In this document: positions 723-44,618 of the stretch, piece after piece
Numbering within the stretch: the first letter of the stretch is position 1
How the letters are laid out: every line of letters begins with the position of its first letter
From: Thalia democratica
Taxonomy: Eukaryota
Direction: 5' to 3'
NCBI GenBank assembly: GCA_965202585.1
Contig: OZ241832.1
Coordinates: forward strand, 56,978,001 to 57,042,000
Length of the DNA: 64,000 nucleotides
Translations under genes and position numbers: made by a program
Notes under the pieces: generated by a model
The model's input: the letters and a program-made list of their open reading frames with translations, nothing else
Database searches by the model: none
Told to the model about the DNA's origin: nothing

Positions 723-3700
723 TCATTCTACTTCGACGAAATCTGCAAATGATATTTTTTTTTTAAAGTTGGTTAATATTTTGTAATAAGGTACTCTTTA
801 GAAGACTAGTGAGTAAAATATCGTTTTAAATAATGAATAAAAACCTACTAAAGACAGAAATTGTTTTTAAAATATATAATAAAATAGCTTAAGGTCAATA
901 GAGTTTCTTATTAATAACTGTAAATTAAAACGTTATAACTGTTAATAAATTTAATGTATCATAATTTCTTTTAATGTATAGCAAAGCTAAAAAGTGAACT
1001 ATTCTCTTAAAGTTAAGTTTTAAACCTGAAACAAAAAAAAAATTGAATAATGAATATCATACAACTTACTTTCGTTTATAGATTTTCAACAAACGCAAAA
1101 CATTAAAAGCGTTCTTTTGAAAATCCTTTATTTAAGTTTCATTAACAGATTTTCAATATACAAAAAATTCAACATAGGTTAATAATTTGTAAATGTGTAT
1201 TGTTAAAGAGAATTAAAAGATATTTCTAGATAATAAATAAAAACCTATTAAGGTAACAAACAATTCTAACATATATAACAAAAAAAGCTTTATCTCGTTT
1301 AAAAATGTTTTACTTTTAACTGAAATTTAAACCAATAAAACTATTAGTAAGTTTAAATTTCTTATAATTTTTATTCAAATGTATAGTAAAGCTAACAAGA
1401 AAATTTTTTCTGTCAAGTTTAAACTTTCAAACTGACTTACAAAACATCTAATACTTTATAACAAAAGTAAAACAACTTGTTTCCAACAACAGATATTCAA
1501 CATTCAAAAAATTCAACTCACCACAGCCGACGAACACGATGTTCTCCAACGACACGTTTTCCGGGTATCCCCCGAACTCGGAACTGGCGAACTCGAGCAC
1601 GAAGGGAACTCCGTCATCGACCAGATTCAGCTCGACCTCCACCGTTCCGCTTCGTCGCCTTTTCCACAATATCTTCTTGTTCGACATTCGCTCGTTCGGT
1701 GTTCGGCCGTACTTCTGCTCCAAGCGGATCGTCACAACGCCACGAATCAGGTTCTGTGATTGGTTGGTTGTTTTGCTTTGGACTCTTTTTGAATATTACT
1801 TTACATTCAACTGAGGATTTCGTTTGGTTTATTTCAAACGAGTGAAACATTGTTTTTATAATAAAATTAAAAAATTGAGTTTTACTTTGGTATTTGAATT
1901 TTTCTTTAATGGTAATAACTGCCCAGTAGACTTTCTCCATATTACTCTAGTCTAGTGTGTTAAATAACTGCTATATTCTATAATACAATTTAATGTTAAA
2001 CAACTATTAGTTTTAGATATTTCCGTTAAGAAAGGTAACAAATTTTTTTTGCTATAAATTGAACTATCTACAAAGATTTTATAGTTCAAAAAATTGTGCT
2101 TTTTTGTCGAAAAAAAAACTTTATATATAGTTAAAAAAATGCTAACATTATTCGTGAATTCGAATGTAACTTTGCACGAGCAATTATTGGTTGATTTCAA
2201 AAGTCCAGTGCTCAGGGCTGAAGGTGAAGTATAGTTTTCTAGTTGCCAACTTTCTTCTGAGAAAAATAAACAGTCATTTAATTTAATTTTCTTCGATTTT
2301 TACTTTAAAAAGTTGAGCTAACAAGCAAGAATAAAAGGATGGATTTTTATAAGAAAAAGCAATAAAAACTGTTTAAACATTGTTAAATTAAAAGACTTAA
2401 GTTTTACGAAAAAAGTCTTATGATTCATATAATTAGTAATTGGTGTCTTTGACAACCACAATTAAACAAAAATAGTTTTAGTTATTATTGTACTGGTAGT
2501 GTTTAGTTATTGTATAATACTTCCAGTCTCTTTTAAAAGAAAATTTTCAATATTTCATACATTTCAATCTACTTTTATAACTTTTAAACAAAAAATTTTT
2601 CATAACTTTAAATTAAAAACTATATACCATAGTTGAAATTGTTTTGTCATAAAATACTAAAAAACCTTACTTGAAAACCAGTTTGTTAAAAAAAAAATTA
2701 AAACCTAAAAGTTTTTAGCAATGAAAAGCTCACCTTACACAATCATATTGAAAATAAATCAAAAAAATAAAGTTTTAGTGATCAATAATGAAAATAAGAT
2801 AAAAAAAAGCTTTTTGCTGACTCGGCAAATATGACTTGCCACATTATGCTAATGATTTGCACAATTATCAAGTCACCAAACTTTAGCTTACGGTCAAAGT
2901 TTGTAAGCAAAATAAGTTATAGTAAAAATGTGTTATGTAGTTTGAAAACAAAAATATAGTTTTGTTTATAAACAATGCCAAACTTCAACTGTCTTTCTTT
3001 CAATATATATTTAGTAAAAGTTTCATGATAATAAATTTTTACAGACAAACTTGCTTAAGTTTTTTTGTCTCTATTTTTAATTTAAATAAAAAAATACTGG
3101 ATTAGTTCTTGTTAGTTAAATGTAAAGAAGCAATTGAAAAATATTTCCAAAATAAACGAACAAATTTCACAGTAACAAAATGAACACAACAATTACAATC
3201 ACGAGATAAATACTTTACTCTCCACGGAGCACGAATATAATAAACTTTTACCTTCGTTGCTTGTCTTCTCCCACCTATCAGGAGCGTTCTCGTTTGTATT
3301 TGAAAATGAAAGTTTGACACTTCTCGCGGAACCTGAATGTTTTTCACTTTAGTTTGAAAGAAAAAAATTCCGAATTTATACAGATTTATAGGTTTAATAT
3401 TGAAACAAAACAAAAAACTCTATTAAAACGTTTTAAACTTAAGCTTACATAACATACTTAACTTTCAAATATGTTGAATAGTTTAAGTTGTTGTACTTAA
3501 CAGATCAACATATTTTTAATCCATAGAAAAAAAAGTTAGTTTTTGATAACAAATAGCTTTTTTAGTTTATTTGTTTTTGAATATACTATAAGCTGTTCAC
3601 AAATTATCCTGAACTATACACATGTAGATTTCAGACTTGCATAAACAACTTTAAAATAATTGTATATATTTATAATTTTAAGACTTTTGGACTCAAACAA

Positions 3701-6098
3701 ACTTATCAATGTACCATTGTTGCACTTGAGTCCTCCATCGATGACAATTTCGTCGATGTTGATTGTCGGTCCAACTCCGCAATACTTGGTGTCACCTTTG
3801 CACGTTTGGTTGTTAAGCACACTTGCTTTCAAAACAACCTAAGCGTTAAAGTTTATATTTATTGCAAGTTTGTTTAGTAGTTGTAAACGTATTGTGCACT
3901 TAAATTTTGATTTTCAGTTACATATAAATTACACGTAAGTTTAATTTTTAAAAAGCTAATTATATGTAAAAACTGAATTAAAAGTTATTGAAAACAAACA
4001 TGCTAAAATATTTAGTGGTTCAAAACAGTAGTTTTTACTTGGTTTGATAATTATTTTGTGTGATTTTCTAACGCTATAGCTTATTTTAATTAATATAGAA
4101 AATTCTTTATACTTAGTGAATTAAAAAAAAAATGTTAAAATTTTAAATTGTTGTCATATGATTTTTATAACATCTAAAAGTTTGTAAGCGCTTTAAAACT
4201 TTTACGCAATGTTCTTTCTTGGAAACTTCATTTAACAGTTTGAAAAGCTAGTTTTGCTAAATTTCGAATATACTAAATGACGTTTTAAATAAATTATACA
4301 ATGAAGTATTTAGTGTTTGTAAGTACTGCTATCATAAAAAAATTTAAAACAAGAATAAAAGTTGCAATCGCTTCAAAACTTCAACATTTTCACTCAATAA
4401 ACCGAACACTTTACAAACACGCTGCAAACCGACCCTGTATTCACCGGCGAGGGTGGAAACGTCGAAATTGAACTTCTCCATCTTCCACCCGAACACGGCG
4501 TGGTCGACCTCGAAAAAACTCTCCGCGCCTTCCACCTCCTCCAACTCGTCATTGCTGGCCGGTATGACGTAACCTCTCAAGCTCGACCCGTCGCAGTGGA
4601 TCGCCGAGTGCATCGAGAAAGTCACGTGGTCCAGTTCCGTGACGTCAAAGGTCGGTGACGTCATGTAGGCGGTGGTGAACTTCTCCCCGCTGTCAGGGTC
4701 GCCGACCACTTTGGCGAAGAACTGGTTCTGAACGTTCTCCTTTTCCTGCACGCCTTGGAAAGCGGCGCAGTTTACAGGGACTTTCTTTGAATTTTCCCGC
4801 CTCTTCTCGTGATCAACTGAGGGGAGTTTCCCGTCCGGAATTATTTCCCGCCAGTTGCAGTTGACCCTCGAATCGACATGCTCGAAATCGCACTTGTCAC
4901 GCTTGAGCAAGTCCACGTGATCAGCTGTCGTAGTGTTTCGGCTGAAGTAGCCGAGGATCGGTAGAAGCTGGTTGCACGACTCGTGGAACGCTACTGTGAC
5001 GTCATCGTCATTTACGACGTCATTATCAGGATTTATTGTTACGTGATTGTTATTTGTGACGTAATCTTTTTTGTATAACATTTTCAATACTACATTATTA
5101 TTTGCATCAGGTCTGACGATGTTCTTCAGAGAAATCCATTTTTCTCCGGTGAACTTTTCTTTTTCGGTTTGAAAGAAATCATCAAAAAATTTCTTGTTCA
5201 AAATTATTTCCTTCACTTGGAACTCTTTCGACTTGCTGCTGATCGTGAGACTGCAGGTGTTTTTCGGGACTGCAAGGTTTTTGGTGGAAACCAATTTTTC
5301 GTCAATTTTAGATTCGTTGTTGTGAAATAAACCTGGAAAAATAAACAGCTGAGAAACATCGTAGAACTAAATCGTTTGGTGCTTTTGGTGTTAGTATTTT
5401 CTGAGTTTCTTAAAAACTCTTTTAATTTTTGTAAAATAAAGTTGATTTAAAAAAATAATTGTTTGTTTAAAATATTAATAGGGATATAACGTTTTAATTT
5501 TCAATTTAACTACGAAACTCAATAAAAGTCTCAAACAGAAATGTTATTTTTAAATATTTACAGGGAAACAAATGTTTTAAATGCTTATCATAAACTTTAA
5601 ACAAAACTCACCTCGATTTTTCAGCAAGATGAAAGTGCACGCCAGCGCGACGATGAGGAAGATGGCGATGAAGACGATCAGCGTCCTCTTCTTCTTGAAG
5701 CAGTAGGAGCATATATTGCTCATCTTGCGCTTCTTGCGCTTCTTGCGCTTCTTGCTCTCCTTGATGCTCACAGCGATCAGCTGGTCGCAGTCTTTCGGCG
5801 TCTGATCTTTTTCTGAAAAAATAAAAATTAATAAAACTTATAATTAAATGAGTATGATGCTAAAGCTTCTAAAAGCAAAGTTTTGAACTAAATCTACTGA
5901 AACAGTATATAAAACTTTTATTGTATTGTAAAAAGTCAAAAAATAGTAAAAACTTTATTATACTCCGTAATGAAATTCAAAATAAAAAAATTATACTTAA
6001 TTAAACTTTTAAGCAAATAAAAAATAAATAAAAAACTCAATCAGTAACTTACGTGTTTTTTGTTGCATTACGTACGTTTCCTTAATTACTTTTGGCAT
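723..6098 (-). CDS. Type II single-pass membrane protein with tandem MAM-like domains, copy 1 (intact; ~581 aa, or ~570 aa with the short exon 5)
   Basis: Coding exons on the minus strand: 6098-6053, 5812-5612, 5332-4434, 3838-3715, 3332-3219 (or -3252), 2256-2147, 1753-1522, 742-723. All introns are GT..AG with matching phases, total 1746 nt, and exon lengths recur in copies 2 and 3 except for 3n indels and the copy-3 exon-2 frameshift. Translation: MPKVIKETYVMQQKT, then KKRKKRKKRK-MSNICSYC-FKKKR, a hydrophobic TLIVFIAIFLIVALACTFILL, then CDFEHVDSRVNCNW...AYMTSPTF...GWKMEKF...YRVVLKA...INIDEIVIDGGLKC (MAM consensus CxFE..CxW..LxSP..W..FxVxFxA..IAIDDI...C) and a second MAM-like end PFVLEFA...NVSLENIVFVGC. 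The 20-nt last exon (DFVEVE*) is the least certain part, though its TGA is at the same position in all copies. Confidence 0.85.
5723..5755 (-). repeat. 9-bp coding repeat (KKR)n in the N-terminal tail
   Basis: TCTTGCGCT x3.7 in copy 1, and x2.7 in copy 2 (25314-25337) and copy 3. Confidence 0.9.
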
Positions 6099-6151
6099 AA
6101 CACTTTTTCACTTCAAACACTTTTTCAGAAATTAATATTAACAACTACTAT

Positions 6152-6165
6152 CTGTAAGTTTCTTT
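6152..6165 (-). promoter_or_regulatory. Splice acceptor (AAACTTACAG) 53 nt upstream of the start ATG
   Basis: Present in all copies (AG at 6153-6152, 25903-25902, 44666-44665). In-frame stops lie between it and the ATG in copies 1 and 2, so the segment is 5' UTR. Confidence 0.5.
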
Positions 6166-15100: not shown

Positions 15101-18100
15101 AAATTCACATCAAATACTTGAATATAAACTTTATTTAACTGCGTAGTTTTAAGTTCGTTTTGTTTTAAAATAAATTTTCATAGTCAAGATGTTACTTAAT
15201 AGTTCTTTAACTTACATTATTAGCATAAGATAATTTCCTTATAAATAAAAATATATTTAAACAAAGTTGTTTTCTTGTTGAGCTTTAACAAGATGTAAAT
15301 AATTTCACATACTCTATAAAGATAGTATTGCTATTCAAGGTTTTAAAAAGGTCAAGCTAGATTTAGAATACAAAGAAAGTATGGTTTTTTATTATTTTAT
15401 TAACAACATAAATTATTGATCTATTTATGTATGTTTATACATACATCATATAGTTTAAAAAGAAAATGTTTTTTTAAGTTTAAGTCTAATAAATCAAGTT
15501 CACGTAAATTTTTGGTGAAAAATTAATATATATTAAAATCGCGTAGTTTTTAACTTTTAAGTTTTTTACAATAAATTCTAAAAGTATAATTTGTTTTTTG
15601 AACTTTCAACTACATGTTAGTGCGTTTGGTTTTAAGAAATATATAATATTTATGAGGCAATATTATTATTAAATACGTAATTTAAAAGTTTTTATTTTTT
15701 GATAACACTCAACTTTAAACTCAAATACGTTCAAGGACGTACAAAAATTTTATCATTCCGATTTTTTTTAAACTCTAAAGAAAGCCAGTTTGATTTTTTC
15801 TACTTAATAATAAAACGATATTATTTTATTTTAGTTGAAATAAACTGAGTTAAATAGTAATGTATAATACAAGCTAAAAATATCACTGCTAACAAAGTTG
15901 TAATTAGTTAGATTTGGTAAAACTTAAATTAAACTTAAAGTTAATTTCAAATTTAAAAAAACGATAAATATTGCAACCTTAAATTAATATAAGTAAAATG
16001 AATTGACTCTTTATACTACAAATTAAACCAGAAAAACTCCTTTTTTTTAAATCAGATCAATTTTCAAATTTTTGTTTAACTTAAAGTTTACTTTGAAAAT
16101 AGTATAATTTTGATATGTTTTATTAATTCAAAGTGCGCGATTGTGACATATCAAAACTAAAATAAGTTCGAGTGCTTATAGAAAAGTGAGACACGATTTT
16201 TAAAAAACTACAAATTTTTCGCTGTAAAATGAAACATTTTTAAAGAAATATAAAACAAGCAGGGGTTTTTAAAATAAACTAAAAACGAGTAAAACTCTTA
16301 AACAAATTTTAATTCTAAAAAAATCGTACACTTTTTAGATTTAGACACTTTTAAATTAAATTTAATTTGTAATTTTACGTCAAATTTACAACTTCTCAAA
16401 AAATATTTAGAAATTGTGCCAGCTAAATATTTAGCAAGATTATATTAGTTTTGCAATGACTTGAGTTAAAAGACAAGACAAATTAATATGATATACTTTT
16501 AATCTTAAAAAGTATTTGAAACTTGTTTGTTTGGTAAATCCAATCGAACACAGTGTTTTTTGATTAACTTTGCGAACTTTTGTTTAATTTTTAAGCAAAG
16601 CTTTGCCCAACTTACTAGCCGTAAAAAGCTTGTTTAAAAAGCACACATATTGTAAAACTATTTTTAATATTTTATTTATTTAAATTCTTTTGTCTAATTA
16701 CATGGTTTTGGTAAAACAAAACAACCTTGTACTATTAATAAAGCAGTTTTATAACTGGAAAAGTTCGCTTTATCAGAACTAGGTAATTGAATAAAACAGT
16801 AACAAAACGAACAAAAGTGTAAGAAATATTTTGATTATGTAAACTAAAATAGTAGATGTAAATTTAAAATAAAAACAAGTTAACATAACTATTTACAAAA
16901 AAGTAATAAACAGCATGCATTTTACATTTTTGTAGAGAACAACAACCTCTTTTTGTAGTATCAATGTATTTCGATTCTTATTAAAAATCTCGTATCGATT
17001 TACATTTGTAGGATGAATTTGATCCAGTTTAACCGCAATCATAGTTTACATTTATTTTATTTATTTTGAATGGTATTTTTATTGAAAATTATACTTATCT
17101 CGTGATGGTAGAACTTTATTTTAAGTAAATTTCAGCAAAGTTTAAAGTTGGTGCTTATTATATATGTCAAAAATGTGGTTTTTGTTAAAAAACATTTTGT
17201 AGAGCAATTGTCACAAAACTTTTTTTTAGTCTTTAGATTGGGAAATAACCTTTCTTTAAGGCACAATTTAGTTTCTACAAGCTTATTTTACTACTATAAG
17301 CAGTTAAAGTTTTAATTGTTTTATATTAAATTATAAACTGAAGAAAAACAAGTGATGATTTTGATGGATGTTGTTGTTTTCTATACGTAATAGAGTTTCA
17401 CAATAAATATAAAAGTAGCGGAAGTTTATAAACAAAGAATAAAATCTCCATACATATGTTGATATTTAATTCTTTACTTTTTAATAATCGTATTTTGTAA
17501 TGACTTAAGTTAAAAGACAAAACAATTTAATATCATAAGTTAAAAAGGTATATTGTTTCGTATCAGAACAAGAAACATTATCGAAAACGAGTCGCTCAAT
17601 CGTATTCTTCATGTAACGTTTTTATTTCAAGTACAAAATAACATGTAAAAAAAGTTCCATGCAAACTTTAAAAGTGCGAACACGTTTCGTTACAGAAAAA
17701 TATGTTTCGCCCATTTTTAAAATCTTTAAACTTGTACAGGTAGCAGATATATGGGTACTGTTACTACAAAAATCAAAATTTCAAGCTGTCCTTTGAAGTC
17801 TTGTTATTAAACCAATGGTTAAAACTGCTCCTAAAGTAAGCAAAAAGAGACTTTTTTGGTACAACTTGCATTAAACAACAAAAACATTTTGTTTAAACAG
17901 AATTATTTTTTAACACGAGTTCAAATTTGATGATTTGTTCTGCGGTAAAACTTAGTAGTTGCAAAAGTTTGTTGTAAACACTTTAAATATTATTAAGTTT
18001 TCAGTTGTTCATAAAAAATACTACAGGTATTATAGAAAATATAGTTAGTACTAATATTTTTTATCTACGTAATCAACTGCAAAACATAGAAAATGAAACA

Positions 18101-20001: not shown

Positions 20002-22513
20002 TCATTTTATCTCGACGAAATCTGAAAAGTATCATTTTTTCTTTAAAAATTGGTTAATATTTTGTAATAAGGTACTCTTTAGAAGACTATTAAAGAAAAA
20101 TACCTTTTTAAATACAGAATGAAAATCAACTAAAGACAGAAAATATTTTGAAACAAATAATAAATAGCTTAAGGTCAATAGAAGTGTCTTATAAATACTG
20201 TAAATTAGATCATTATAACTGTTAATAAATTTAATGTGTCATAACTTCTTTTAATGTATAGTAAAGCTAATTAGTAAACTAATTCTCTTAAAGTTTTTAA
20301 CAAAAAACAAACAAAATTTAAATTTTTCGAGCAATAAATATCATTTATACAACTAATTTTCGTTTACTGATTTTCAACACACATGACATTAAAAGTGTAC
20401 TTTAAAAAATCCTTAAACTGAGTTTAATAAACAGACTTTCAATAAAGAGAAAATTCAACATAGGTTTATAGTTTGTAAAGACATATTGATTAGGTAAAGT
20501 AAAATAAAATTTTAAATAATGAGTAACAACCTTATGAAGTAAAAAATACTTTAAACATGCGTAATAAAAAATTGCTTTAGGTCATATAAATTTTTTTTAT
20601 TCTAAACACCAAATTAAATCAATAAAACTGTAAAAATATTTAAATTTTGAATAACATTTTTTATTGTATAGTAAGGCTAACAAGAAAATTTATTTTGTCA
20701 AGTTTAAACTTTCAAACTGACTCACAAAACGTCTAATACTTTATAAGAAAAGTAAAACAACTTGTTTCCAACAACAGATATTCAACATTCAAAAAATTCA
20801 ACTCACCACAGCCGACGAACACGATGTTCTCCAACGACACGTTTTCCGGGTATCCCCCGTACTCGGAACTGGCGAACTCGAGCACGAAGGGAACTCCGTC
20901 ATCGACCAGATTCAGCTCGACCTCTACCGTTCCGCTTCGTCGCGTTTTCCACAATATCTTCTTGTTCGACATTCGCTCGTTCGGTGTTCGGCCGTACTTC
21001 TGCTCCAAGCGGATCGTCACAACGCCACGAATCAGGTTCTGTGATTGGTTGGTTGTTTTATTTTGAATTCTTTTTGAATAATACTTTACATTCAAACATT
21101 GTTTTGACAATTAAATTAAAAAAATTGAGTTATACATTGGTATTTGAATTTATAAGTTGTTGTTATTGTGATAACTGTCCAATAGGCTTTATCCGCATTA
21201 CTCTAGTGTGTTAAATTACTGCTATGTTCTATAATACATTTTAATGTTAAGCAAATATTAGTTTTAAATATTTTAATTCAGCAAAGCTAACAATTTTTTT
21301 CCTACAAATTGAACTATCTGCGCATAATTTAAATTTTTAAAAGTTGTGTTTTTTGTAGAAAAAAAACATTATTTATAGTTATAAAATACTTACATTATTT
21401 GTGAATTCGAAAGTAACTTTGCACGAGCAATTTTTGGTTGATTTCAAAAGTCCAGTGCTCAGGGCTGAAGGTGAACGTGTGCTAACTTCTAGTTGCCAAC
21501 TTTCTTCTGAAAAAACAAACAGCCTGTTAATTTCAGTTTCTTCTATTGTTAGGAAATAAACTGTTTTATACAGTCCATAAAAGAAGCGTGAAAAATGATA
21601 TTCTCTAAATTTGTACGGAAAATTTAGAGAATATCATTAAGGCACATAACCAAAAAATTTTAAATCAAAACTCAGGAATTCAGAGTCAATGTGGCTGCGC
21701 TGGTAGCTGTAAATATAATTTGAAAGGGGTAATTGCCGTTCAGAGAACATCGTCTACAAGGCCACAGTTAACTCTGGCGTTGAGACGAGGTTCTATGTCT
21801 GCTTGTGCTCGACTCAGTTTAGATTCAGGTATGCCAATCATAAAAAATCTTTCAAAGGCGGCATATATGAAAATGACACTGAACTTTCGAAGTATGTTTG
21901 TGGCTTAAAGCGCAGCGACATTGACTTCGAAATATTCTGGGAAGTTATAAAAAGAGCACAGCCTATAGCCGACGGCAATAGCCCAATATGTAGGCTGTGT
22001 CTCAAAGAAGCATCAGCCGTTGTATATGCACTGAAAGACAAGAGATGCCTAAACAAAAGAAGCGAGTTTGTATCGTCTTGTAGACATATAAAAAAGTCGC
22101 TTTTAAAGTTTAACAAGTTTTAATTTCATCTTAAAATAACCTAAATTTCAATTTCCATCTTAATTTTATCTTTATCTCTTTCAATTATCTGTCCTAATAT
22201 ATAGTTACTCACTAAAGTTATATGAAATTTTGCTAGTTTATTGTCGATTGGTAAATTAATTTTTGCACAAGCCGTTTTGCATGGTTTTTGATAGTTTCAA
22301 AATTACGTCATAATCTATTTATGCAAAAAAAAATTAACTTTCATTGGTGATTTTGTTTTGTGCTTTATTTTAAACTTGTTTTGAAGCTGATGAGTGAATA
22401 GTCACGAAACTCGAGTCCTTTGAGTTTTGCATCTTTAAATAATCCTTTTTAATAATAAAGCCCTCAAGGTGAGCTCAGTGTGAAAAATTTAATTTATTAA
22501 GTTAAATAACTTA

Positions 22514-22552
<39 letters not shown>

Positions 22553-25500
22553 GAAGTTTCATGATAATAAATTTTTACAGACAAGCTTTCCTAAGTTTTT
22601 TTGTCCCTATTTTTAATTCAATAATAAAATACTGGATTAATTCTTGTTAGCTAAATATAAAGAAGCACTTGAAAAATATTTTCAAAAAAAACGAACAAAT
22701 TTTAAGAAAATGAACACAACAATTTCAATCACGAGATAAATACTTCACTCTCCACGGAGCACGAGTATAATAAATTTTTACCTTCGTTGCTCGTCTTCTC
22801 CCACCTATCAGGAGCGTTCTCGTTTGCGTTTGAAAAAGAATGTTTGACGCTTCTCGCAAAACCTGAATGTATTTCACTTTAGTTTAAACAAGAAGCAAAT
22901 AGTTCTATTAAAACGAATTAAACTTAAGCTTACATAACATACTTAACTTTCAAAATATGTTGAATAGATTAAGTTGTTGTACTCTACAGATCAACATATT
23001 TTTAATCAATAAAAAAAAGTTAATTTTCTTATTCTAAATAGTTCATTTTGATTTATTTTTTGAAAATACTATAAGCTTTTCACAAACTATCCTGAACTAT
23101 ATACATGTAGATTTTAGACTTGCGTAAACAACTTTAAAATATGTAATTGTATTTATTTTTAATTGTTAGACTTAAGTACTCAAACAAACTTATAAATGTA
23201 CCATTGTTGCACTTGAGTCCTCCATCGATGACAATTTCGTCGATGTTGATTGTCGGTCCAACTCCGCAATACTTGGTGTCACCTTTGCACGTTTGGTTGT
23301 TAAGCACACTTGCTTTCAAAACAACCTAAGCGTTAAAGTTTACATTTATTTTGAATTTGTTTAGTAGTTGTAAATGTATTGTACACTTCTATTTAGATTT
23401 TCAGTTACATATAGATTACACAAAAGATTAATTTGAATAAAAGATAATTTAATGTTCAAACTAAATTAAAAGTTAATGAATTACAAACATGCTTAAATAT
23501 TTAGTGGTCCGAAGCAGTAACTTGTACTTGGATTGTAGAATAAGACAATTATTTTTTGTGTTTTATCTAACACTATAGCTTATTTTATTTAATATTGAAA
23601 AATTCTTTATACTTAGTTAATTTTAAAAAAAAAGTTATACTTTCAAACTGTTGAAATATGATTTTTTATAACATACAAACGTTTGTAAGCGCTTCAAATC
23701 TTTTACGCAATATTCTTTATTCATCTAACAGTTTGAAAAACTAGTTTTGCTAAATTTCGAATCTAATAATTGACATTTTAAATAAATTATGAAAAAAAAA
23801 TTTAGTGTTTGTAAGTGTACTATATGCCTGTTTAAACATTTTTAATAACATGCAGATCGCAAAAAAGTTTTCGAATTTTTATAAACTATGTTCACTATTA
23901 ACGTTACACTGGTATCATAAAACGTCTTCAAAACAAGAATAAAAGTTGCAAGCGCTTCAAAAACTTCAACATTTTCACTCAATAAACCGAACACTTTACA
24001 AACACGCTGCAAACCGACCCTGTATTCACCGGCGAGGGTGGAAACGTCGAAATTGAACTTCTCCATCTTCCACCCGAACACGGCGTGGTCGACCTCGAAA
24101 AAACTCTCCGCGCTTTCCACCTCCTCCAACACGTCATTGCTGGCCGGTATGACGTAACCTCTCAAGCTCGACCCGTCGCAGTGGATCGCCGAGTGCATCG
24201 AGAAAGTCACGTGGTCCAGTTCCGTGACGTCAAAGGTCGGTGACGTCATGTAGGCGGTGGTGAACTTCTCCCCACTGTCAGGGTTGCCGACCACTTTGGC
24301 GAAGAACTGGTTCTGAACGTTCTCCTTTTCTTGCACGCCTTGGAAAGCGGCGCAGTTTACAGGGACTTCCTTTGAACTTTCCCGCCTCTTCTCGTGATCA
24401 ACTGAGGGGAGTTTCCCGTTCGGAACTATTTCCCGCCAGTTGCAGTTGACCCTCGCATTGACATGCTCGAAATCGCACTTGTCACGCTTGAGCAAGTCCA
24501 CGTTATCAGCTGTTGTAGTGTTTCGGCTGAAGTAACCGAGGATCGGTAGAAGCTGGTTGCACGACTCGTGGAACGCTACTGTGACGTCATCGTCATTTAC
24601 GACGTCATTATCAGGATTTATTGTTACGTAATTGTTTCTTGTGACGAAATCTTTTTTGTATAATATTTTTAATACTACATTATTATTTTCATCAGGATTG
24701 ACGATGTTCTTCAGAGAAATCCATTTTTTGCCGGTGAACTTTTCTTTTTCGGTTTGAAAGAAATCATCAAAAGTTTTCTTCTTCAAGATTATTTCCTTCA
24801 CTTGGAACTCTTTCGACTTGCTGCTGATCGTGAGGCTGCAGGTGTTTTTCGGAACTGCAAGGTTTTTGGTGGAAACCAATTCGTCGTCAGTTTTAGATGC
24901 GTTGTTGTAGAACAAACCTGTAAAAACAGTTGAACTTCGTAGAATAAAAGTGTTTGATGCATTTGGTGTTAGTATTTTTCGAAATTCTTAAAAGCTGTTT
25001 TAATTTTTATGAAATAAAGTTGATTTAAAAAACAATTGTTGTAAGAAATTTATAGAGATATAACTTTTTAATTCCGAATTTAACTACGAAATTAAATGAA
25101 ACCAAGAAACATTTGTATCATACATGTAAACGAGATATTTTCAAATATTCATAGAGACACAAACGTTTCAAATGCTTATCATAAACTTTAAACAAAACCC
25201 ACCTCGATTTTTTAGCAAAACAAAGGTGCACGCCAGCGCGACGATAAGGAAGATGGCGATGAAGACGATCAGCGTCCTCTTCTTCTTGAAGCAGTAGGAG
25301 CAGATCTTGTTCATCTTGCGCTTCTTGCGCTTCTTGCTCTCCTTGATGCTCACATCGATCAGCTGGTCGCAGTCTTTCGGTGTCTGATCTTTTTCTGAAA
25401 AAATAAGAAAAATAATCAAAAAAGTAAAATATTATTAAATGAATATGATACTAAAGCTTCTAAAGACAAAATTCAAAACTATATGTAATAAAACAGTATA

Positions 25501-25855
25501 TGAAACTTTTATTGCATCATAAAAAGTCAAAAGGTACTAAAAAGTTATAATAAATTCAATTAAGAACATCAAAAAAAATTATACTTAAATAAACTTTTAG
25601 TAAAAATAAATATTTAAAAATTAAAAGATACAAGGTAAAAGATTTAGCAGCTAACTCTACCAAAACAGCTAATAATATTTTATTTTTTTATAAAAAAAAA
25701 AGGTACAAAACTAAGACGAGGTCTTTATAAAACTGAAATATAAAATTAAAACTTGTATAAAATTTTAGTAAAATAAACAAATAAAAAAAAAACTCAATCA
25801 GTAACTTACGTGTTTTTTGTTGCATTACGTACGTTTCGTTAATTACTTTTGGCAT
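20002..25855 (-). CDS. Type II membrane protein with tandem MAM-like domains, copy 2 (intact)
   Basis: Exons 25855-25810, 25394-25203 (192 nt, one KKR unit shorter), 24917-24019, 23325-23202, 22862-22749 (or -22782), 21506-21394 (113 nt, +1 codon), 21038-20807, 20021-20002. Splice sites and phases match copy 1, and the ORF track independently recovers exons 2, 3, 4 and 7. Confidence 0.85.
21612..22123 (+). pseudogene. Penelope-like GIY-YIG endonuclease fragment (degenerate)
   Basis: Reads CTENLENIIKAHNQKIL...QCGCAGSCKYNLKG, then a 1-nt frameshift near 21728, then NCRSENIVYKATVNSGVETRFYVCLCSTQFRFRYANHKKSF...TELSKYVCGLK...IFWEVI...CRLCLKEA...LNKRSEFVSSCRH. This matches the PLE pattern VY..Y(I/V)G...F..R...H..SF...LS...LK...W...C.LC..E...LN.R.E...CRH; the YVG position reads YVC here. 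Confidence 0.85.
22380..22424 (+). ncRNA. Minimal type I hammerhead ribozyme motif in the PLE tail
   Basis: CTGATGA core 22387-22393; helix II GTGA-atag-TCAC; GAAA 22406-22409; palindromic helix III ACTCGAGT; GUC cleavage triplet with C at 22417; helix I TTTGAAG/CTTTGAG (4 Watson-Crick pairs plus 3 G-U). Confidence 0.8.
22518..22549. repeat. (TA)16 microsatellite at the PLE 3' junction
   Basis: Read directly. The equivalent sites carry shorter AT runs (40294-40306 in copy 3, ~3003-3010 in copy 1). Confidence 0.95.
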
Positions 25856-36490: not shown

Positions 36491-36735
36491 TAAATTGCGA
36501 GGGCAATAAAAGTTAAATAGTAATACACCGCTTTTATGTACAAAAATTAATAAACATTTTAACACAAAAAAAAATAAAATCACAAAAAATTAATTTTTTC
36601 TTACATTTGAAATCAAAAATGAATCCCATAACAAAAAAAATTGGTGCAGTCAATCAATTAAATTGCTAGGGGAACAAAAAAATAGGAATACACTGCTTTT
36701 ATGTACCAAAAATTTAAGTAAAGTTTTAACACTAA
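36491..36735. repeat. Two degenerate direct repeats ~168 bp apart in the spacer between units 2 and 3
   Basis: TAAATTGC.AGGG...AATACAC.GCTTTTATGTAC.AAAA...TTTTAACAC starts at 36491 and again at 36659. Confidence 0.6.
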
Positions 36736-38174: not shown

Positions 38175-41100
38175 TCATTTTACTTTGACAAAATCTGAAA
38201 AGTATTACTTTTCTTTAAAAATTGGTTAATATTTTGTAATAAGGTACTCTTTAGAAAACTAGTGGGTAAAAGACCTTTTTAAATAATGAATAAAAACCTG
38301 CTTAAGACAGAAAATATTTTTGAAATTTATACTTAAAAAACTTAAGGTCAATAGAAATGTCTTATAAATACTGTAAGTTAAACCATTATAACTGTTAATA
38401 AATTTAATGTGTTATAACTTTTTTTAATGTATCATAAAGCTAACTAGTAAACTAATTCTTTTAAAGTTAAGTTTTAAACCTGAAACAAAAAAAAAAAGAA
38501 TAATACAACATATCATACAACTTATTTTCGTTTATAAATTTTCAACACACGCAAAACATTAAAAGCGTTCTTTTAAAAATCATCAATTTAAGTTTCATTA
38601 ACAGATTTTCATTATACAAAAATATAATAATTTGTAAATGTGTATTGTTGAAGAGAATTAAAAAATCTTTCTAGATAATGAATAAAAGCTTATTAAAGTA
38701 ACAAACACTTTTAACATATATAACAAAAAAAGCTTTAGGTCGTTTAAAAATGTTTTACTTTTAATTGAAATTTATACCAACAAAACTATTAGTAAATTTA
38801 AATTGCTTATAATTTTTATTTTATTGTATAGTAAAGCTAACAAGAAAATTTATTCTGTCAAGTTTAAATTTTCAAACTGACTCACAAAACATCTAAAAAG
38901 TTACAACAAAAGTAAAACAACTTGTTTCAACTAAAACACACAATTCAACTCACCACAGCCGACGAACACGATGTTCTCCAACGACACGTTTTCCGGGTAT
39001 CCCCCGTACTCGGAACTGGCGAACTCGAGCACGAAGGGAACTCCGTCATCGACCAGATTCAGCTCCACCTCCACCGTTCCGCTCCGTCGCGTTTTCCACA
39101 AAATCTTCTTGTTCGACATTCGCTCGTTCGGTGTTCGGCCGTACTTCTGCTCCAAGCGGATCGTCGCAACGCCACGAATAAGGTTCTGTGATTGGTTGGT
39201 TGTTTACTTTGGCTTCTTTTTGAATAATATTTTACATTCAACTTAGGTTCTCGTTTGGTTTATTTTAAACGAGTGAAACATTGTTTTGGTAACAAAATTA
39301 AAACTATTAAGTTTTACTTTGGTATTTAAATTTATAAGTTGTTTTTATTGTGATTACTGTCAAATAGACTTTCTACACATTGCTCTAGTGTGTTAAATTA
39401 CTATTATATTCTATAATACAGTTTAATGTAAAGCAACTACATATTAGTTTTAAATAATTCAGTTCAGAAAAGCTAACAAACGTTTTTTGCTACAAATTGA
39501 ACTATCTGCAAAGACTTTGCATTTAAAAAATTGTGCTTTTTAGTCGAAAAAAAAATTATAATTAAATATAAAAATACTTACATTATTCGTGAATTTGAAT
39601 GTAACTTTGCACGAGCAATTTTTGGTTGATTTCAAAAGTCCAGTGCTCAGGGCTGAAGGTGAACGTGTGCTAACTTCTAATTGCCAACTTTCTTCTGAAA
39701 AAATAAACAGTCTGTAAATTTCAGTTTCTTCGATTGTTAGGAAATAAACTGTTTTATACAGTTCATAAAAGAAGCGTGAAAAAAAACAAAATTTTATAAC
39801 AACAAAACTAGAGTTACTAAACTTAATATCTGTTTAATTTTTAATATTTATTAAAAATTACATTTAATTTACGTAAATCATCAAAAAAATATGTGACTAA
39901 CAGCTTGAGAAATGTGCAAATCATTAGCATAATGTAGCAAATCATTTACATGTTTGATGAGTTGGCAACTTTCTTAATGCTTTTTTATTATTTATACCCT
40001 TATCCCTAACCCACTATACAAATCATATTGGAAATAAGTCAAAGAATAAAATTTGGTGGTCAATATTAGAAATAACATACATAAAAAGCTTTTTTTGCTG
40101 ACTAGGCAAATACGATTTGCCACATCGTGTCAATGATTTGCATAATTCTCAAGTCACCCACTCCAAAATATGATCAAAGTTAAAGTTCAAAATTTGTAAG
40201 AAAAATAAGTTTTAGTAAAAATATGTTATGTAGTTTGAAAACAAAAATATACTTTATTTATAAAAAGGCCAAACTTCGACTGTCTTTCTTTCAATATATA
40301 TATATAGTAGAAGTTTTAGGATAATGAATTTTTACAGACAAACTTTCCAAAGTTTTTTTATCTATATTTTTAATTCAATAAAAAAATACTGGATTAGTTC
40401 TTGTTAGTTAAATACAACGAAGCAATTAAAAAATATTTCCAAAATTCACATTAACGAAATGAATGCAACAACTTAAATCTTGAGATAAATACTTCACTCT
40501 CCACTAAACACGAGTATAATAAACTTTTACCTTCGTTGCTCGTCTTCTCCCACCTATCAGGAGCGTTCTCGTTTGCGTTTGAAAAAGAATGTTTGACGCT
40601 TCTCGCGGAATCTAAATATATTTCACTTAAGTTTAAAAAAAAAACAGTTCTATAAAAAGAAAATAAAATGAAGTTGACGTAAGATACTTCACTTTCAAGA
40701 AACGTTGAATAAATTTAGTTGTTGTACTCAACATATCAATTCAAAATTTTTAATTTTATTTACATAACAATGTTTCTCACGCTTGAACCAAATCAAACGA
40801 GATTATTAGTTTATTAAAATCTGAAAAAAATTTACAAAAACATGCAAGAAGACATTACGCTAAACTTGAAATAAAATACAAAAAAAAAACAAATAAAACT
40901 TCTAGTTTAAAGCTATAAACTTCGGATAATCATAATGTCTTTAGGTTGGTTTATGTTATTTTTTGAAAAATACTCAACATATCAACAAACTTATAAATAC
41001 TTAAAATAAAAGTAAATTTTATCATCATACGTAGTTCTTTTTTTTAAATACTATAAGCTGCACACAAATTATCCTGAACTATATACAGTAACCTCTCACT

Positions 41101-44100
41101 AATTTACGCACATTGTGTCCACAGAAAAAGTGCGTAAAAATGCGAAAGATCGTAAAGATACGAGAGGTATCAAATATACTTACTATAATGGTTGTTTTAT
41201 GATATTGGTTCTAGTTAAAAGCAGACTGGGGACTTTCCCACTTTTAACAATTTGTTTACTTAATTTATTAATATGAAAACAAAAGACAAAACTATAGACA
41301 CATTAAAAAAGGATTTAGATTTATAAAAAATAGTAATACTTGTAGAAAAATTTTACTAGTTTTAATAATAAGTAGATTTTATTCTTATCTTTATTTATAT
41401 GTGACTTAAATGGTACTTGACATTTATATTCTATTCTACTTAGCAAATTCAACTTATAGTTAAGCATTTGTTTACAATTAATAAATGGTTTGGTGTCTAT
41501 ATCAAAATTTGTTTCTATAGCCTTTTACAAAAATATGCATTTGGTGCTGTAATGGATTTCTTCTTTTGAACAAAAATATATAAAGTATAAGAAAAATTTT
41601 AATACTGAGGTATAACTAAATGTTTATCAATTAGTCAAGAAACATAAGTTTACAAATTCTGAAGATATAGAGAGGTGAGTTAGTATTTAAAAACATATTT
41701 TAAATTAAAAATATACAATACACCTAATTAATGTAATATTAAAAAATATATATATTTACTTTTTTAATTTTTTAGAATTCTAAAATGCGTAACTAAACGA
41801 GAGTGCGTAACGTCACGAGTGCGTAAAGATTCGAGAGGTTACTGTACATGTAGGTTTCAGACTTGCATAAACAACTTTAAACTAATTTTTTTTTTTAAGT
41901 TTTAGACTTAAGTACTCTAACAAACTTATCAATGTACCATTGTTGCACTTGAGTCCTCCATCGATGACAATTTCGTCGATGTTTATTGTCGGTCCAACTC
42001 CGCAATACTTGGTGTCACCTTCGCACGTTTGGTTGTTAAGCACACTTGCTTTCAAAACAACCTAAGCGTTAAAGTTTATATTTATTGCAAGTTTGTTTAG
42101 TAGTTGTAAATAAATTCTACACTTGTACTTGATTTTCAGTTACATATATATATTACACAAAAGATTAATTTTAATAAAAGCTAAATTAATGTTTAAACTA
42201 AATTAAATATTAATGAATTACAAACATTTTTAAATGTTTAGTGGTCCAAAGTTGTAGCTTGTACTTGGATCAGAGAAAAAGACAATTTTTTTTTGCGTTT
42301 TTCTAACACTTAAGCTTATTTTTTTTAATATTGAAAAATTCTTTATACGTAGTGAATTATAAAAAAAAGTTAAACTTTTAAACTGTTGTCATATGATTTT
42401 TTATAACAAATGAATGTATGTAAGCGCTTCAAATCTTTAACGCAATATTCTTTATTCATCTAACAGTTTGAAAAACTAGTTTTGCTAAACTTTGAATCTA
42501 CCAAATGAAATTTTAGATAAATCATGCAAAGAAATACTTAGTGTTTGTAAGTATATTGTAAGCCCGTATAAACATTTTCAATAACATGCAGATCACAAAA
42601 AAGTTTTCGAATTTTTATAAACTATGTTCACTTTTAATGTTACACTGCTATCATAAAAAGTCTTCAAAACAAGGATAAAAGTTGCAAGCGCTTAAAAAAC
42701 TTCAATTTTTTCACTTGATAAACCAAACACTTTACAAACACGCTGCAAACCGACCCTGTATTCACCGGCGAGGGTGGAAACGTCGAAATTGAACTTCTCC
42801 ATCTTCCACCCGAACACGGCGTGGTCGACCTCGAAAAAACTCTCCGCACCTTCCACCTCCTCCAACACGTCATTGCTGGCCGGTATGACGTAACCTCTCA
42901 AGCTCGACCCGTCGCAGTGGATCGCCGAGTGCATCGAGAAAGTCACGTGGTCCAGTTCCGTGACGTCAAAGGTCGGTGACGTCATGTAGGCGGTGGTGAA
43001 CTTCTCCCCGCTGTCAGGGTCGCCGATCACTTTGGCGAAAAACTGGTTCTGAACGTTCTCTTTTTCCTGAACGCCTTGGAAAGCGGCGCAGCTTACAGGG
43101 ACTTTCTTTGAAGTTTCCCGCCTCTTCTCGTGATAAACTGAGGAGAGTTTCCCGTTCGGAACTATTTCCCGCCAGTTGCAGTTGACCCTCGAATCGACGT
43201 GCTCGAAATCGCACTTGTCACGCTTGAGCAAGTCCACGTGATCAGCTGTTGTAGTGTTCCGGCTGAAGTAGCCGAGGATCGGTAGAAGCTGGTTGCACGA
43301 CTCGTGGAATACTACTGTGACGTCATCGTCATTTGCGACGTCACTATCAGGATTTATTGTTACGCGATTCTTACTTGTGAAGAAATCTTTTTTGTATAAC
43401 ATTTTCAATACTACATTATTATTTGCATCAGGTTTGACGATGTTCTTCAGAGAAATCCATTTTTCTCCGGTGAACTTTTCTTTTTCGGTTTGAAAGAAAT
43501 CATCATAAGTTTTTTTGTTTAAGATTATTTCCTTCACTTTGAACTCTTTCGACTTGCTGCTGATCGTGAGGCTGCAGGTGTTTTTCGGGACTGCAAGTTT
43601 TTTGGTGGAAACCGATTTTTCGTCAATTTTAGATGCGTTGTTGTGAAATAAACCTGGAAAAAAATAGTTAAAAAAGCTTCGAAGAACTAAATTGTTTGGT
43701 TCTTATCGTGTTATTGTTTTTCAAATATCATAAAAAATCATATAATTTTTCTAGAATAAAATTGTTTAAAAAAAGAATTGTTGTGAAACATTGATAGAGA
43801 TATAACGTTTTTATTTCCAGTTCATTTACGAAACTAAATAAAAGTCAGAAACAGAAATGTTATTATTAATCATTTATAGAGGCACTAATAACTCAACAAA
43901 ACTCACCTCTGTTTTTAACAAGATGAATATTTATATTTAAGTCAACAAAACTCACCTCGATTTTTCAGCAAAACAAAGGTGCACGCCAGCGCGACGATCA
44001 GGAAGATGACAATGAAGACGATCAGCGTCCTCTTCTTCTTGAAGCAGTAGGAGCAGATTTATTCATTTTGCTCATCTTGCGCTTCTTGCGTTTCTTGCTC

Positions 44101-44618
44101 TCCTTGATGCTCACGGCGATCAGCTGGTCGCAGTCTTTCGGCATCTGATCTTTTTCTGGAAAAACAATAAAAATAATTAAAAAAACTAATAATTAAATGA
44201 GTATGAGGCTAAAGCTTTTTAAGACAAAATTAAGAACTAATACTACTAAAACGGTAAATGAAACTTTTATTGTATTGTAAGAAGTCAAAAAATTGTAAAA
44301 ATTATAACAAAATCCCTTATGAACATCAAAAAAAATTATACTTAATTAAAATTTTAAGCAAATAAAAAGTTTAAAAAATACAAGATAAAAGCTAAAAGAT
44401 TTGACAATTAATTCTATCAATACAGCTGATAATACTTTAACGTCGAGTAAATAACTAATAAAAATAAAGTATAAAACTATGATGAGGTCTTTATAAAACT
44501 AAATTTAAAAATTAAAACTTAAATAAACTTTTAGTAAAATAAACAATTATAAAAACTCAATGAGTAACTTACGTATTTTTTGTTGCATTACGTACGCTTC
44601 GTTAATTACTTTTGGCAT
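38175..44618 (-). pseudogene. Type II MAM-like membrane protein, copy 3, frameshifted in exon 2 (young pseudogene or a base-call error)
   Basis: Exons 44618-44573, 44155-43956 (200 nt, not 3n), 43653-42755, 42061-41938, 40611-40498 (or -40531), 39694-39582, 39185-38954, 38194-38175. Exon 2 reads ATG AAT AAA TCT GCT where copy 2 has ATG AAC AAG ATC TGC, giving SAPTASRRRGR* before the TM helix. All other exons are open with intact splice sites. Confidence 0.7.
41086..41844. mobile_element. Non-autonomous Tc1/mariner/pogo-type MITE, 759 bp
   Basis: TA target duplication at 41084-41085 and 41845-41846. 26-bp imperfect TIRs CAGTAACCTCTC-ACTAAT-TTACGCAC and CAGTAACCTCTC-GAATCT-TTACGCAC. The empty site GAACTATATACATGTAG is present in copy 2 (~23095-23110). 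Subterminal GTGCGTAA repeats; no transposase ORF. Confidence 0.92.

What the first reader, a model, noticed from the sequence alone, without database searches (positions are those of the whole stretch)
723..44618. Expanding tandem family of type II membrane proteins with a multi-MAM ectodomain and no catalytic or signalling domain
Seen: three colinear 8-exon genes with N-terminal tail, one TM helix and NxS/T sequons in the C-terminal part (NES/NAS, NTT, NQT, NCS, NVS). There is a full MAM-like domain across exons 3-4, a second across exons 5-7, and a possible partial one just after the TM (…KWISL…NVVLKML…NDDDVTVAFHESC). Known: MAM domains are adhesion/recognition modules in meprin, PTPmu, neuropilin, zonadhesin, ALK and enteropeptidase; those are mostly type I, secreted, or carry a protease domain. 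Inference: a type II, MAM-only architecture in a birth-and-death tandem array is not one I recognise and is a candidate lineage-specific recognition system (gamete, allo- or microbial recognition). Function cannot be read from the sequence.
Basis: partly seen in the sequence, partly recalled or inferred. Interest (0 to 1): 0.72.

Follow-up and report, generated by a model that had tools for sequence, protein, structure and literature searches.

The report
Tunicate type II membrane double-MAM gene array
The window holds three tandem copies of a real eight-exon gene for a membrane-anchored surface protein with two very diverged MAM adhesion-type domains and nothing else; it belongs to a small, uncharacterised family found so far only in tunicates, and nothing in the sequence shows it to be a fast-evolving recognition system.

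Summary
Three colinear eight-exon genes lie on the minus strand, inside ~19.5-kb tandem units. All seven introns have AG/GT borders in every copy. Copy 1 gives 570 aa (not 581), with one TM helix (residues 59-79), a basic N-side flank that implies type II topology, and seven sequons, all on the C-terminal side. Copy 3 has a 1-nt frameshift in exon 2, at an A-run, so it may be an assembly error.

The MAM reading holds only indirectly. No exon reaches Pfam MAM. Support comes from:
- Full-length homologues (Clavelina lepadiformis XP_076825277.1 and marine mRNA-like contigs), whose C-terminal domain hits Pfam MAM at 1e-16 to 1e-17.
- A paralogue on C2, which passes Pfam MAM in the first-domain region.
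- Fold and language-model searches, which put MAM first.

Homologues end 7-15 residues after the second MAM, so there is no protease domain. The membrane-proximal ~130-aa domain is a beta-sandwich of unresolved type, and "partial MAM" is not supported.

The genome holds five copies here, three on C6 and about six distant loci. Pairwise dN/dS is 0.1-0.6, lowest in the distal MAM, and exon-level gene conversion is likely. This argues against a diversifying recognition system. No RNA data were available. I judge it a new variant of a known kind, of modest interest.

The parts
723..6098 (-). Gene copy 1, intact, 8 exons, 570 aa: 6098-6053, 5812-5612, 5332-4434, 3838-3715, 3332-3252, 2256-2147, 1753-1522, 742-723
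   Evidence: Splice sites, phases and open frame. Conservation with L009 and the C6 paralogues.
5612..5812 (-). Exon 2: cytoplasmic tail with a polybasic K/R run, a CxxC next to the membrane, and the TM helix (5684-5622)
   Evidence: Hydropathy and flank charges. The K/R run varies by 9 nt between copies.
4893..5332 (-). First half of exon 3: membrane-proximal domain of about 130 aa, an all-beta sandwich of unresolved type
   Evidence: AF2 model with pLDDT about 60-70, strands only. Best structural matches Z 5.7 or below. No language-model hit. hhalign against the MAM profiles is not significant.
4434..4892 (-). Second half of exon 3: first MAM-type domain, from the CDFE...C.W start up to a phase-0 intron
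   Evidence: A profile built from distant homologues only hits it at E 2e-20. The language-model search puts a MAM cluster first, score 0.93. VIA top hit is a MAM domain, 8yt7, Z 7.4. The C2 paralogue passes Pfam MAM over the same region.
3715..3838 (-). Exon 4: last strands of the first MAM-type domain (...INIDEIVIDGGLKC)
   Evidence: Aligns with the ...ALDEIS...C end of the first MAM-like domain of P0010, P0011 and P0012. Conserved in L009 and the C6 copies.
1522..3332 (-). Exons 5 (3332-3252), 6 (2256-2147) and 7 (1753-1522): second MAM-type domain
   Evidence: Exon 7 against the Pfam-MAM region of P0011: BLASTP 5e-10. A profile of Pfam-certified MAM2 domains hits the three exon-7 pieces of the window, and nothing else in it, at 3e-7 to 1.5e-6. 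Exon 6 aligns on the S.NCSC...(F/Y) core.
20002..25855 (-). Gene copy 2, intact, 568 aa: 25855-25810, 25394-25203, 24917-24019, 23325-23202, 22862-22782, 21506-21394, 21038-20807, 20021-20002
   Evidence: Coordinates transferred by alignment. All sites are AG/GT and there are no stops.
38175..44618 (-). Gene copy 3: all 8 exons and splice sites are kept, but 1 nt is missing in exon 2 near 44059/44058 (an A-run), so the frame from the ATG is lost. Exons: 44618-44573, 44155-43956, 43653-42755, 42061-41938, 40611-40531, 39694-39582, 39185-38954, 38194-38175
   Evidence: Exon 3 is intact. dN/dS of this copy is like that of the others.

Best explanation
Each unit encodes a single-pass type II membrane glycoprotein. 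It has about 58 cytoplasmic residues with a polybasic run and juxtamembrane cysteines, then one TM helix. The extracellular or luminal part is made of three beta-sandwich domains: a membrane-proximal domain of unknown type, then two strongly diverged MAM domains, ending 6 residues after the second one.

Shown: the gene structure, the domain identity and the lack of any further domain.

Inferred: the protein sits at the cell surface and works as a non-enzymatic binding or adhesion module. The membrane-distal MAM pair would engage a conserved partner, either a ligand or the same protein on another molecule, as MAM domains do in RPTPmu, meprin and neuropilin. The basic, probably lipid-modified tail would hold it to the inner leaflet.

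The copies are kept alike by purifying selection and by patchy gene conversion between exons. They are not driven apart.

The family is a small one, seen so far only in tunicates: this pelagic species and its plankton relatives, and the ascidian Clavelina.
For: - Gene model and topology.
- Family is rare: a profile search of 1.84 billion representatives gave only 11 hits. Among them are full-length proteins of 637-644 aa with the same order of tail, TM, N-domain, MAM-like domain and MAM.
- Pfam MAM on the C-terminal domain of homologues: 3.5e-16 (P0010), 5.1e-17 (P0012), 5.9e-8 (P0011), 2.5e-7 (P0026).
- Pfam MAM on the first domain: 1.2e-5, 25.6 bits against a cut-off of 26.4, in P0012. It is over the cut-off (34.6-37.2 bits) in this genome's own C2 paralogue.
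- Profiles built without any window-family sequence hit the window's exon 3 at 2e-20 and exon 7 at 3e-7.
- Fold: for the window's exon 3, the first of 48,161 chains is a MAM domain (Z 7.4), and enteropeptidase-MAM, RPTPmu and NRP1 MAM are in the top 11. For the homologue P0010, the five best are all MAM domains or MAM regions, Z 13.0-11.0, and they cover both domains.
- Language-model features of exon 3, residues 143-299: a MAM cluster is first, at 0.93 with 178 shared features, and 24 of 30 hits are MAM.
- Ends right after MAM2: P0010, P0011 and P0012 stop 9-13 residues after the final Cys, and a 2,634-nt contig carries the uninterrupted 638-codon ORF plus about 700 nt of trailer.
- Shared intron positions with the Clavelina gene.
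- Selection: dN/dS is 0.4-0.6 in the N-domain, 0.2-0.6 in MAM1 and 0.1-0.4 in MAM2. dS is 0.02-0.15 while introns differ by 12-23%, and the closest pair changes from region to region.
Against: - No exon of this gene reaches Pfam MAM, either by itself or in a six-frame scan of the genome that finds 90 other MAM pieces.
- A PDB sequence-profile search was blank.
- The exon-3 model is of low confidence (pLDDT 60). Its best Z of 7.4 is within the range the tool quotes for common folds, and carbohydrate-binding modules and Eph domains score close behind.
- No RNA run holds this locus. Expression, the first exon and the splice pattern are therefore inferred from conservation only.
- Surface localisation, binding partner and lipid modification are all inference.
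- A type II protein with a short basic tail could equally be a Golgi or ER resident.
Confidence: 0.6

Rival explanations
1. One reading: a lineage-specific recognition system (gamete, allo- or microbial recognition), whose tandem copies diversify by birth and death.
For: - Tandem arrays of 5 (C8) and 3 (C6) copies, plus distant loci.
- One copy carries a frameshift.
- Distribution is narrow, tunicates only.
- MAM domains are recognition modules elsewhere.
Against: - Pairwise dN/dS is below 1 in 28 of 30 comparisons. The two above 1 rest on 2-3 synonymous differences.
- The membrane-distal domain, where a variable binding face would be expected, is the most conserved, at 0.1-0.4.
- Exons are homogenised rather than diversified: dS is far below intron divergence.
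- There are no polymorphism or expression data.
Confidence: 0.12
2. The membrane anchor is only a delivery device. The ectodomain is shed or built into an extracellular material, such as the mucous feeding net or the tunic, as a structural or glycan-binding component.
For: - The MAM fold is close to carbohydrate-binding modules in the fold searches, Z about 10 for the homologue.
- Exons are GC-rich islands (44-56% GC in 25% GC DNA), which could reflect codon bias of a highly expressed gene.
- Multi-copy arrays are common for bulk secretory products.
Against: - I identified no cleavage motif between the TM and the first domain, though no systematic motif scan was run.
- The polybasic tail and the juxtamembrane cysteines are conserved within this family's copies and in L009, though the distant homologues have different tails. 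That suggests the anchored form matters.
- The GC richness can equally come from biased gene conversion.
Confidence: 0.15
3. It is an intracellular type II resident of the ER or Golgi, a luminal lectin-like or cargo-handling protein, and not a surface protein.
For: - A short N-terminal cytoplasmic tail plus a signal anchor is the usual build of Golgi residents.
- The tail is rich in K/R.
- The luminal domains are lectin-like jelly rolls.
Against: - Known MAM domains are extracellular.
- There are seven sequons and 11 luminal cysteines, as in surface glycoproteins.
- No known retention motif was tested or recognised.
Confidence: 0.08
4. The copies are decaying, non-functional duplicates, and only look like genes.
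For: - Copy 3 has a frameshift.
- No RNA evidence exists.
Against: - Four of the five local copies have fully open frames of 568-570 codons, and all 35 splice-site pairs are intact.
- dN/dS is well below 1.
- Exons are 91-100% identical, introns 77-88%.
- Orthologous exons are conserved in other species.
Confidence: 0.05

Closest known systems
Clavelina lepadiformis LOC143470875 (XP_076825277.1 / CAK8687842.1, 644 aa) and its 661-aa tandem neighbour, annotated 'uncharacterized protein' / 'MAM domain-containing protein'
   Same: Same order of parts: hydrophilic tail, one TM, a beta-sandwich domain, a MAM-like domain, then a MAM domain, ending a few residues later. The two genes lie in tandem. 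At least four intron positions are shared, including the phase-0 intron inside the first MAM and the intron right after the last Cys.
   Different: Only 17-25% identity. The Clavelina proteins have about 50-60 extra residues between the TM and the first domain. Their C-terminal MAM passes Pfam, and this gene's does not. Neither is characterised.
Enteropeptidase (TMPRSS15) and other type II transmembrane serine proteases
   Same: Type II anchor with a MAM domain in the ectodomain. The enteropeptidase MAM region (chain residues 340-500) is among the best structural matches.
   Different: Enteropeptidase also carries SEA, LDLa, CUB and SRCR domains and a C-terminal protease. Here there is nothing after the second MAM.
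RPTPmu/kappa, neuropilins, meprins, MDGAs, insect scavenger receptor C (MAM-bearing surface proteins)
   Same: MAM jelly-roll fold. The best structural matches are 8yt7, 2v5y/2c9a, 5l73 and 7uab. The expected role is protein-protein binding or oligomerisation outside the cell.
   Different: Those proteins are type I, GPI-anchored or secreted, and they combine MAM with Ig, FN3, CUB, astacin, phosphatase or other domains. This family is type II and has only MAM plus one unknown sandwich.

Membership tests
MAM domain (Pfam PF00629) | The sequence itself matches the Pfam profile at or above the curated cut-off (26.4 bits) | tested here: not met
   No MAM hit on any exon piece at E up to 1-10. The six-frame scan of the whole genome finds 90 MAM pieces, none at this locus or at the C6 array.
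MAM domain (Pfam PF00629) | Significant homology to sequences that do pass the Pfam profile, over the same region | tested here: met
   MAM2: exon 7 against P0011, 5e-10. A profile of Pfam-positive domains against the window gives 3e-7. Pfam on P0010, P0012, P0011 and P0026 gives 1e-16 to 1e-7. MAM1: a profile of distant homologues against exon 3 gives 2e-20. The C2 paralogue is hit by the family profile at 3e-25 and passes Pfam MAM at 34.6-37.2 bits. P0012's first domain scores 25.6 bits.
MAM domain (Pfam PF00629) | Jelly-roll beta-sandwich fold closest to solved MAM domains | tested here: met
   Window exon 3, residues 144-299: rank 1 of 48,161 is the MAM domain 8yt7 (Z 7.4, 134 aligned, rmsd 3.8), and four more MAM entries are in the top 11. 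The model is weak (pLDDT 60, last strands missing). In the homologue P0010, ranks 1-5 are all MAM, Z 13.0-11.0, for both domains. The margin over CBM and Eph domains is small.
MAM domain (Pfam PF00629) | Conserved cysteine pattern, with a C-x-F-E ... C-x-W start and an SP...C...(F/Y) core | tested here: inconclusive
   MAM1 has CDFE, NCNW, SPTF and HC invariant across the family. MAM2 of this gene keeps the NCSC...F core and the final ...VGC, but the first Cys pair seen in P0010 and P0012 is absent. Disulfides cannot be tested here.
Type II (N-in) single-pass membrane protein | One internal hydrophobic helix, no cleavable N-terminal signal, and positive charge on the N-terminal flank | tested here: met
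   There is a single hydrophobic region, with Kyte-Doolittle above 1.6 over residues 53-85; the helix is placed at 59-79 from the sequence. Flank charge is +6 before it and 0 after. 58 hydrophilic residues precede it, and all sequons are C-terminal. Homologues and the C6 and C5 paralogues have the same layout. No experimental topology.
Type II transmembrane serine proteases / enteropeptidase | C-terminal trypsin-like protease domain | tested here: not met
   The reading frame stops 6 codons after the last MAM cysteine, in a 20-nt final exon conserved in all copies. Full-length homologues and an mRNA-like contig end at the same point.
Meprin / astacin-MAM proteases | Astacin catalytic domain and a MATH domain next to the MAM | tested here: not met
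   No Pfam domain other than MAM in any full-length family member.

The most novel reading that the evidence does not exclude
The family is a tunicate-only cell-cell recognition device. The conserved distal MAM pair would make the contact, and the faster-changing membrane-proximal domain and the variable basic tail would set copy-specific behaviour. Arrays kept in step by gene conversion would supply several receptor types per animal, for example for colony, chain or gamete recognition in pelagic tunicates.
Probability: 0.1. Interest if true: 0.65.

Novelty: new variant of a known kind. Interest (0 to 1): 0.35.

Why it matters
MAM domains are known as parts of larger type I or secreted proteins. 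Here they make up almost the whole ectodomain of a type II protein, in a family so diverged that standard domain scans miss it. It is a clean example of an undescribed, tunicate-restricted surface protein family.

It gives a concrete target for expression and binding studies in tunicates, the closest invertebrate relatives of vertebrates. It also shows exon-focused homogenisation inside a tandem array. No function is known yet, so its weight is modest.

Tried and rejected
- Pfam on single exon pieces and on all 13 members of the exon-3 alignment: no MAM hit, only noise.
- PDB sequence-profile search with the exon-3 alignment: only two chance hits, E 0.26-0.58.
- Foldseek on the exon-3 model: nothing at E 0.001 or better. 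Tandem CBMs and enteropeptidase appear at E 0.05-0.2.
- Foldseek on the 637-aa homologue model: many 'significant' multi-domain jelly-roll hits (reelin, enteropeptidase, Vip3, Cry) with TM about 0.2, so not specific.
- RNA evidence: the run search returned only three runs of unrecorded type. When laid on the locus, their contigs covered introns and exons alike and showed no exon-to-exon joints.
- N-domain as a truncated MAM: hhalign E 0.06 and 0.13. Only the short (S/T)P...C motif lines up, and the language-model search gave no hit. Left open, not accepted.
- MAM1 against MAM2 within the family: hhalign E 0.001, probability 22%. The register is consistent but weak.
- GH6 (tunicate cellulose synthase part) as a test of the organism: nothing rang anywhere, controls included, so it was uninformative.
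- Rfam over the window: no family at gathering score.
- Literature: no paper on a type II MAM-only protein or on this tunicate family.
It was assembled only inside scripts, to check frame, length, hydropathy and sequons. Searches were done exon by exon, by reference, and a natural full-length homologue (P0010) was folded instead.
Full report
**What is there**

The window is AT-rich DNA (about 25% GC) from contig C8 of an 802-Mb eukaryotic genome. It contains three tandem units of about 19.5 kb. In a three-way alignment of the units, short islands are 90-100% identical, while the sequence between them is 60-85% identical or unalignable. These islands lie on the minus strand.

**Gene model**

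The islands have open frames, AG/GT borders and compatible phases. They are also the only parts conserved with two independent references: a 6,978-nt marine-metagenome contig of a related species (L009, 74% identical in exon 3) and three 35%-identical paralogues on contig C6.

Copy 1 has exons 6098-6053, 5812-5612, 5332-4434, 3838-3715, 3332-3252, 2256-2147, 1753-1522 and 742-723.

The spliced length is 1713 nt, which gives 570 aa, not 581. Copy 2 gives 568 aa, because it has a shorter K/R run and one extra codon in exon 6.

Two more copies lie just upstream of the window, one of them inverted. All five keep every splice site, and four are fully open. Copy 3 lacks one base in an A-run of exon 2, near 44059/44058. 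This destroys the frame from the ATG. I could not check raw reads there, so an assembly error is possible. Its substitution pattern looks no more relaxed than that of the other copies.

**Topology**

The product has 58 hydrophilic residues, including a KKR-type run and a CxxC next to the membrane. It has one hydrophobic helix (residues 59-79). Net charge is +6 before the helix and 0 after it. All seven N-x-S/T sequons are on the C-terminal side. This is the signature of a type II signal anchor. The C6 and C5 paralogues and the distant full-length homologues have the same layout.

**Is it MAM?**

Direct sequence tests are negative:
- Pfam finds nothing on any exon.
- A six-frame Pfam MAM scan of the genome finds 90 MAM pieces elsewhere but none here.
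- A PDB sequence-profile search is blank.

The case rests on four independent lines.

1. Full-length homologues.
   - A profile of exon 3, searched against 1.84 billion representatives, found only 11 proteins.
   - Among them are full-length homologues of 637-644 aa. P0012 is Clavelina lepadiformis CAK8687842.1 / XP_076825277.1. The P0010 cluster comes from marine contigs of 2-2.6 kb, one of which carries an uninterrupted 638-codon ORF plus trailer, as an mRNA would.
   - Their C-terminal domain hits Pfam MAM at 3.5e-16 and 5.1e-17. P0011 and P0026 hit at 6e-8 and 2.5e-7.
   - The window's exon 7 aligns to that region of P0011 at 5e-10, sharing the motif NLVDDGVPF.
   - A profile made only from these Pfam-positive domains picks out the three exon-7 pieces, and nothing else, among 1,862 ORF pieces of the window, at 3e-7 to 1.5e-6.

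2. The first domain.
   - A profile made only from distant homologues hits the window's exon 3 at 2e-20.
   - The same domain of P0012 scores 25.6 bits on Pfam MAM, against a cut-off of 26.4.
   - A paralogue on C2 of this genome is hit by the family profile at 3e-25 and passes Pfam MAM with 34.6-37.2 bits over the homologous stretch.

3. Fold.
   - The AF2 model of exon 3 is weak (pLDDT 60).
   - Even so, for residues 144-299 the first of 48,161 PDB representatives is a MAM domain (8yt7, Z 7.4). The enteropeptidase MAM region, RPTPmu (twice) and the neuropilin-1 MAM are all in the top 11.
   - In the model of the natural homologue P0010 (domains at pLDDT 70-90), ranks 1-5 are all MAM domains or MAM regions, Z 13.0-11.0, and they cover both domains.
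   - Carbohydrate-binding modules and Eph ligand-binding domains follow closely. The fold evidence alone would therefore say only 'MAM/CBM-type jelly roll'.

4. Language-model features. A search on exon 3, residues 143-299, puts a MAM cluster first (0.93, 178 of 256 features shared). 24 of 30 hits are MAM.

**The membrane-proximal domain**

This domain covers about 130 aa, the first half of exon 3. It is predicted as all-beta and is the fastest-changing part. It has no structural match above Z 5.7 and no language-model hit. It is not significantly similar to either MAM profile (E 0.06 and 0.13). A short (S/T)P...C motif does line up with the MAM core. I leave it as a beta-sandwich of unresolved type.

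**Nothing follows the second MAM**

In all copies the frame ends 6 codons after the last cysteine, in a conserved 20-nt exon. P0010, P0011 and P0012 end 9-13 residues after the same cysteine. The Clavelina gene shares the intron positions, including the one right after that cysteine.

**Family and evolution**

The genome has five copies at this locus, three in tandem on C6, and about six more distant loci on C5, C2, C8, C4 and C236. Clavelina has two in tandem. The only named relatives are tunicate. The close relatives come from Tara Oceans plankton assemblies. Earlier notes of this scan also call the genome a pelagic tunicate.

Among the five local copies:

| Region | dN/dS |
|---|---|
| N-domain | 0.4-0.6 |
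| MAM1 | 0.2-0.6 |
| MAM2 | 0.1-0.4 |

Synonymous divergence (0.02-0.15) is much lower than intron divergence (12-23% mismatches). The most similar pair also differs by region: copies 1 and 2 in MAM1, copy 1 and its upstream neighbour in the N-domain, and other pairs in MAM2. Exons are 44-56% GC in 25% GC DNA.

Together this points to purifying selection plus patchy exon gene conversion, possibly GC-biased. It does not point to diversification.

**Function**

Function is inferred, not shown. The most likely role is a non-enzymatic surface binding or adhesion protein, whose conserved distal MAM pair meets a conserved partner. The rivals are a shed structural or glycan-binding component, an ER or Golgi resident, a diversifying recognition system, and dead duplicates. 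They are weighed in the rival explanations; the last two are disfavoured by the data.

No RNA run covers the locus. I found no paper describing this family or a type II MAM-only protein.

**Verdict**

The recognition-system idea is unsupported. The family is an uncharacterised, tunicate-restricted variant of MAM surface proteins, already present in databases as unnamed models.

The reads tool was given 5,501 letters.

Noticed in passing
window 1805-1880 (intron 6 of copy 1; also in copy 3 and in the inverted upstream copy): A dispersed repeat of about 75 nt lies just upstream of exon 7. Summed contig depth there is 17,000-25,000, against 100-600 in the neighbouring bins. The genome search found 560 first-look candidates, with 81-93% identical copies on many contigs, some as close inverted pairs. 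It looks like a MITE or SINE end.
   Followed up: partly
window 21400-22500 (intron 5 of copy 2): An insertion of about 1 kb is present only in copy 2. It carries ORFs of 62 and 106 aa on the plus strand, and Pfam gives no hit on them. Rfam at gathering score finds no family anywhere in the window.
   Followed up: partly
window 52640-56700: In the spacer upstream of copy 3, a stretch of about 2.29 kb is duplicated in tandem. Repeat families D1, D2, D8, D12 and D16 each have a fourth copy 2,290-2,292 nt after the third.
   Followed up: no
all exons of the three genes, e.g. 4434-5332 and 1522-1753: Coding exons are sharp GC islands (44-56% GC) in 22-27% GC surroundings. Their synonymous sites differ less between copies than introns do. 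Either codon selection or GC-biased gene conversion could explain this.
   Followed up: partly
G000:C9:30.78-30.89 Mb (outside the window): Dozens of canonical Pfam MAM exon hits lie on one strand within about 110 kb. This looks like one giant multi-MAM gene or a dense array, and it is unrelated to this family.
   Followed up: no
L017 413-14932 (Clavelina lepadiformis CAUIVY010000132.1): The two Clavelina family members (661 and 644 aa, 42% identical) lie head-to-tail, 3.6 kb apart. Tandem arrangement is therefore shared between an ascidian and this pelagic species.
   Followed up: partly
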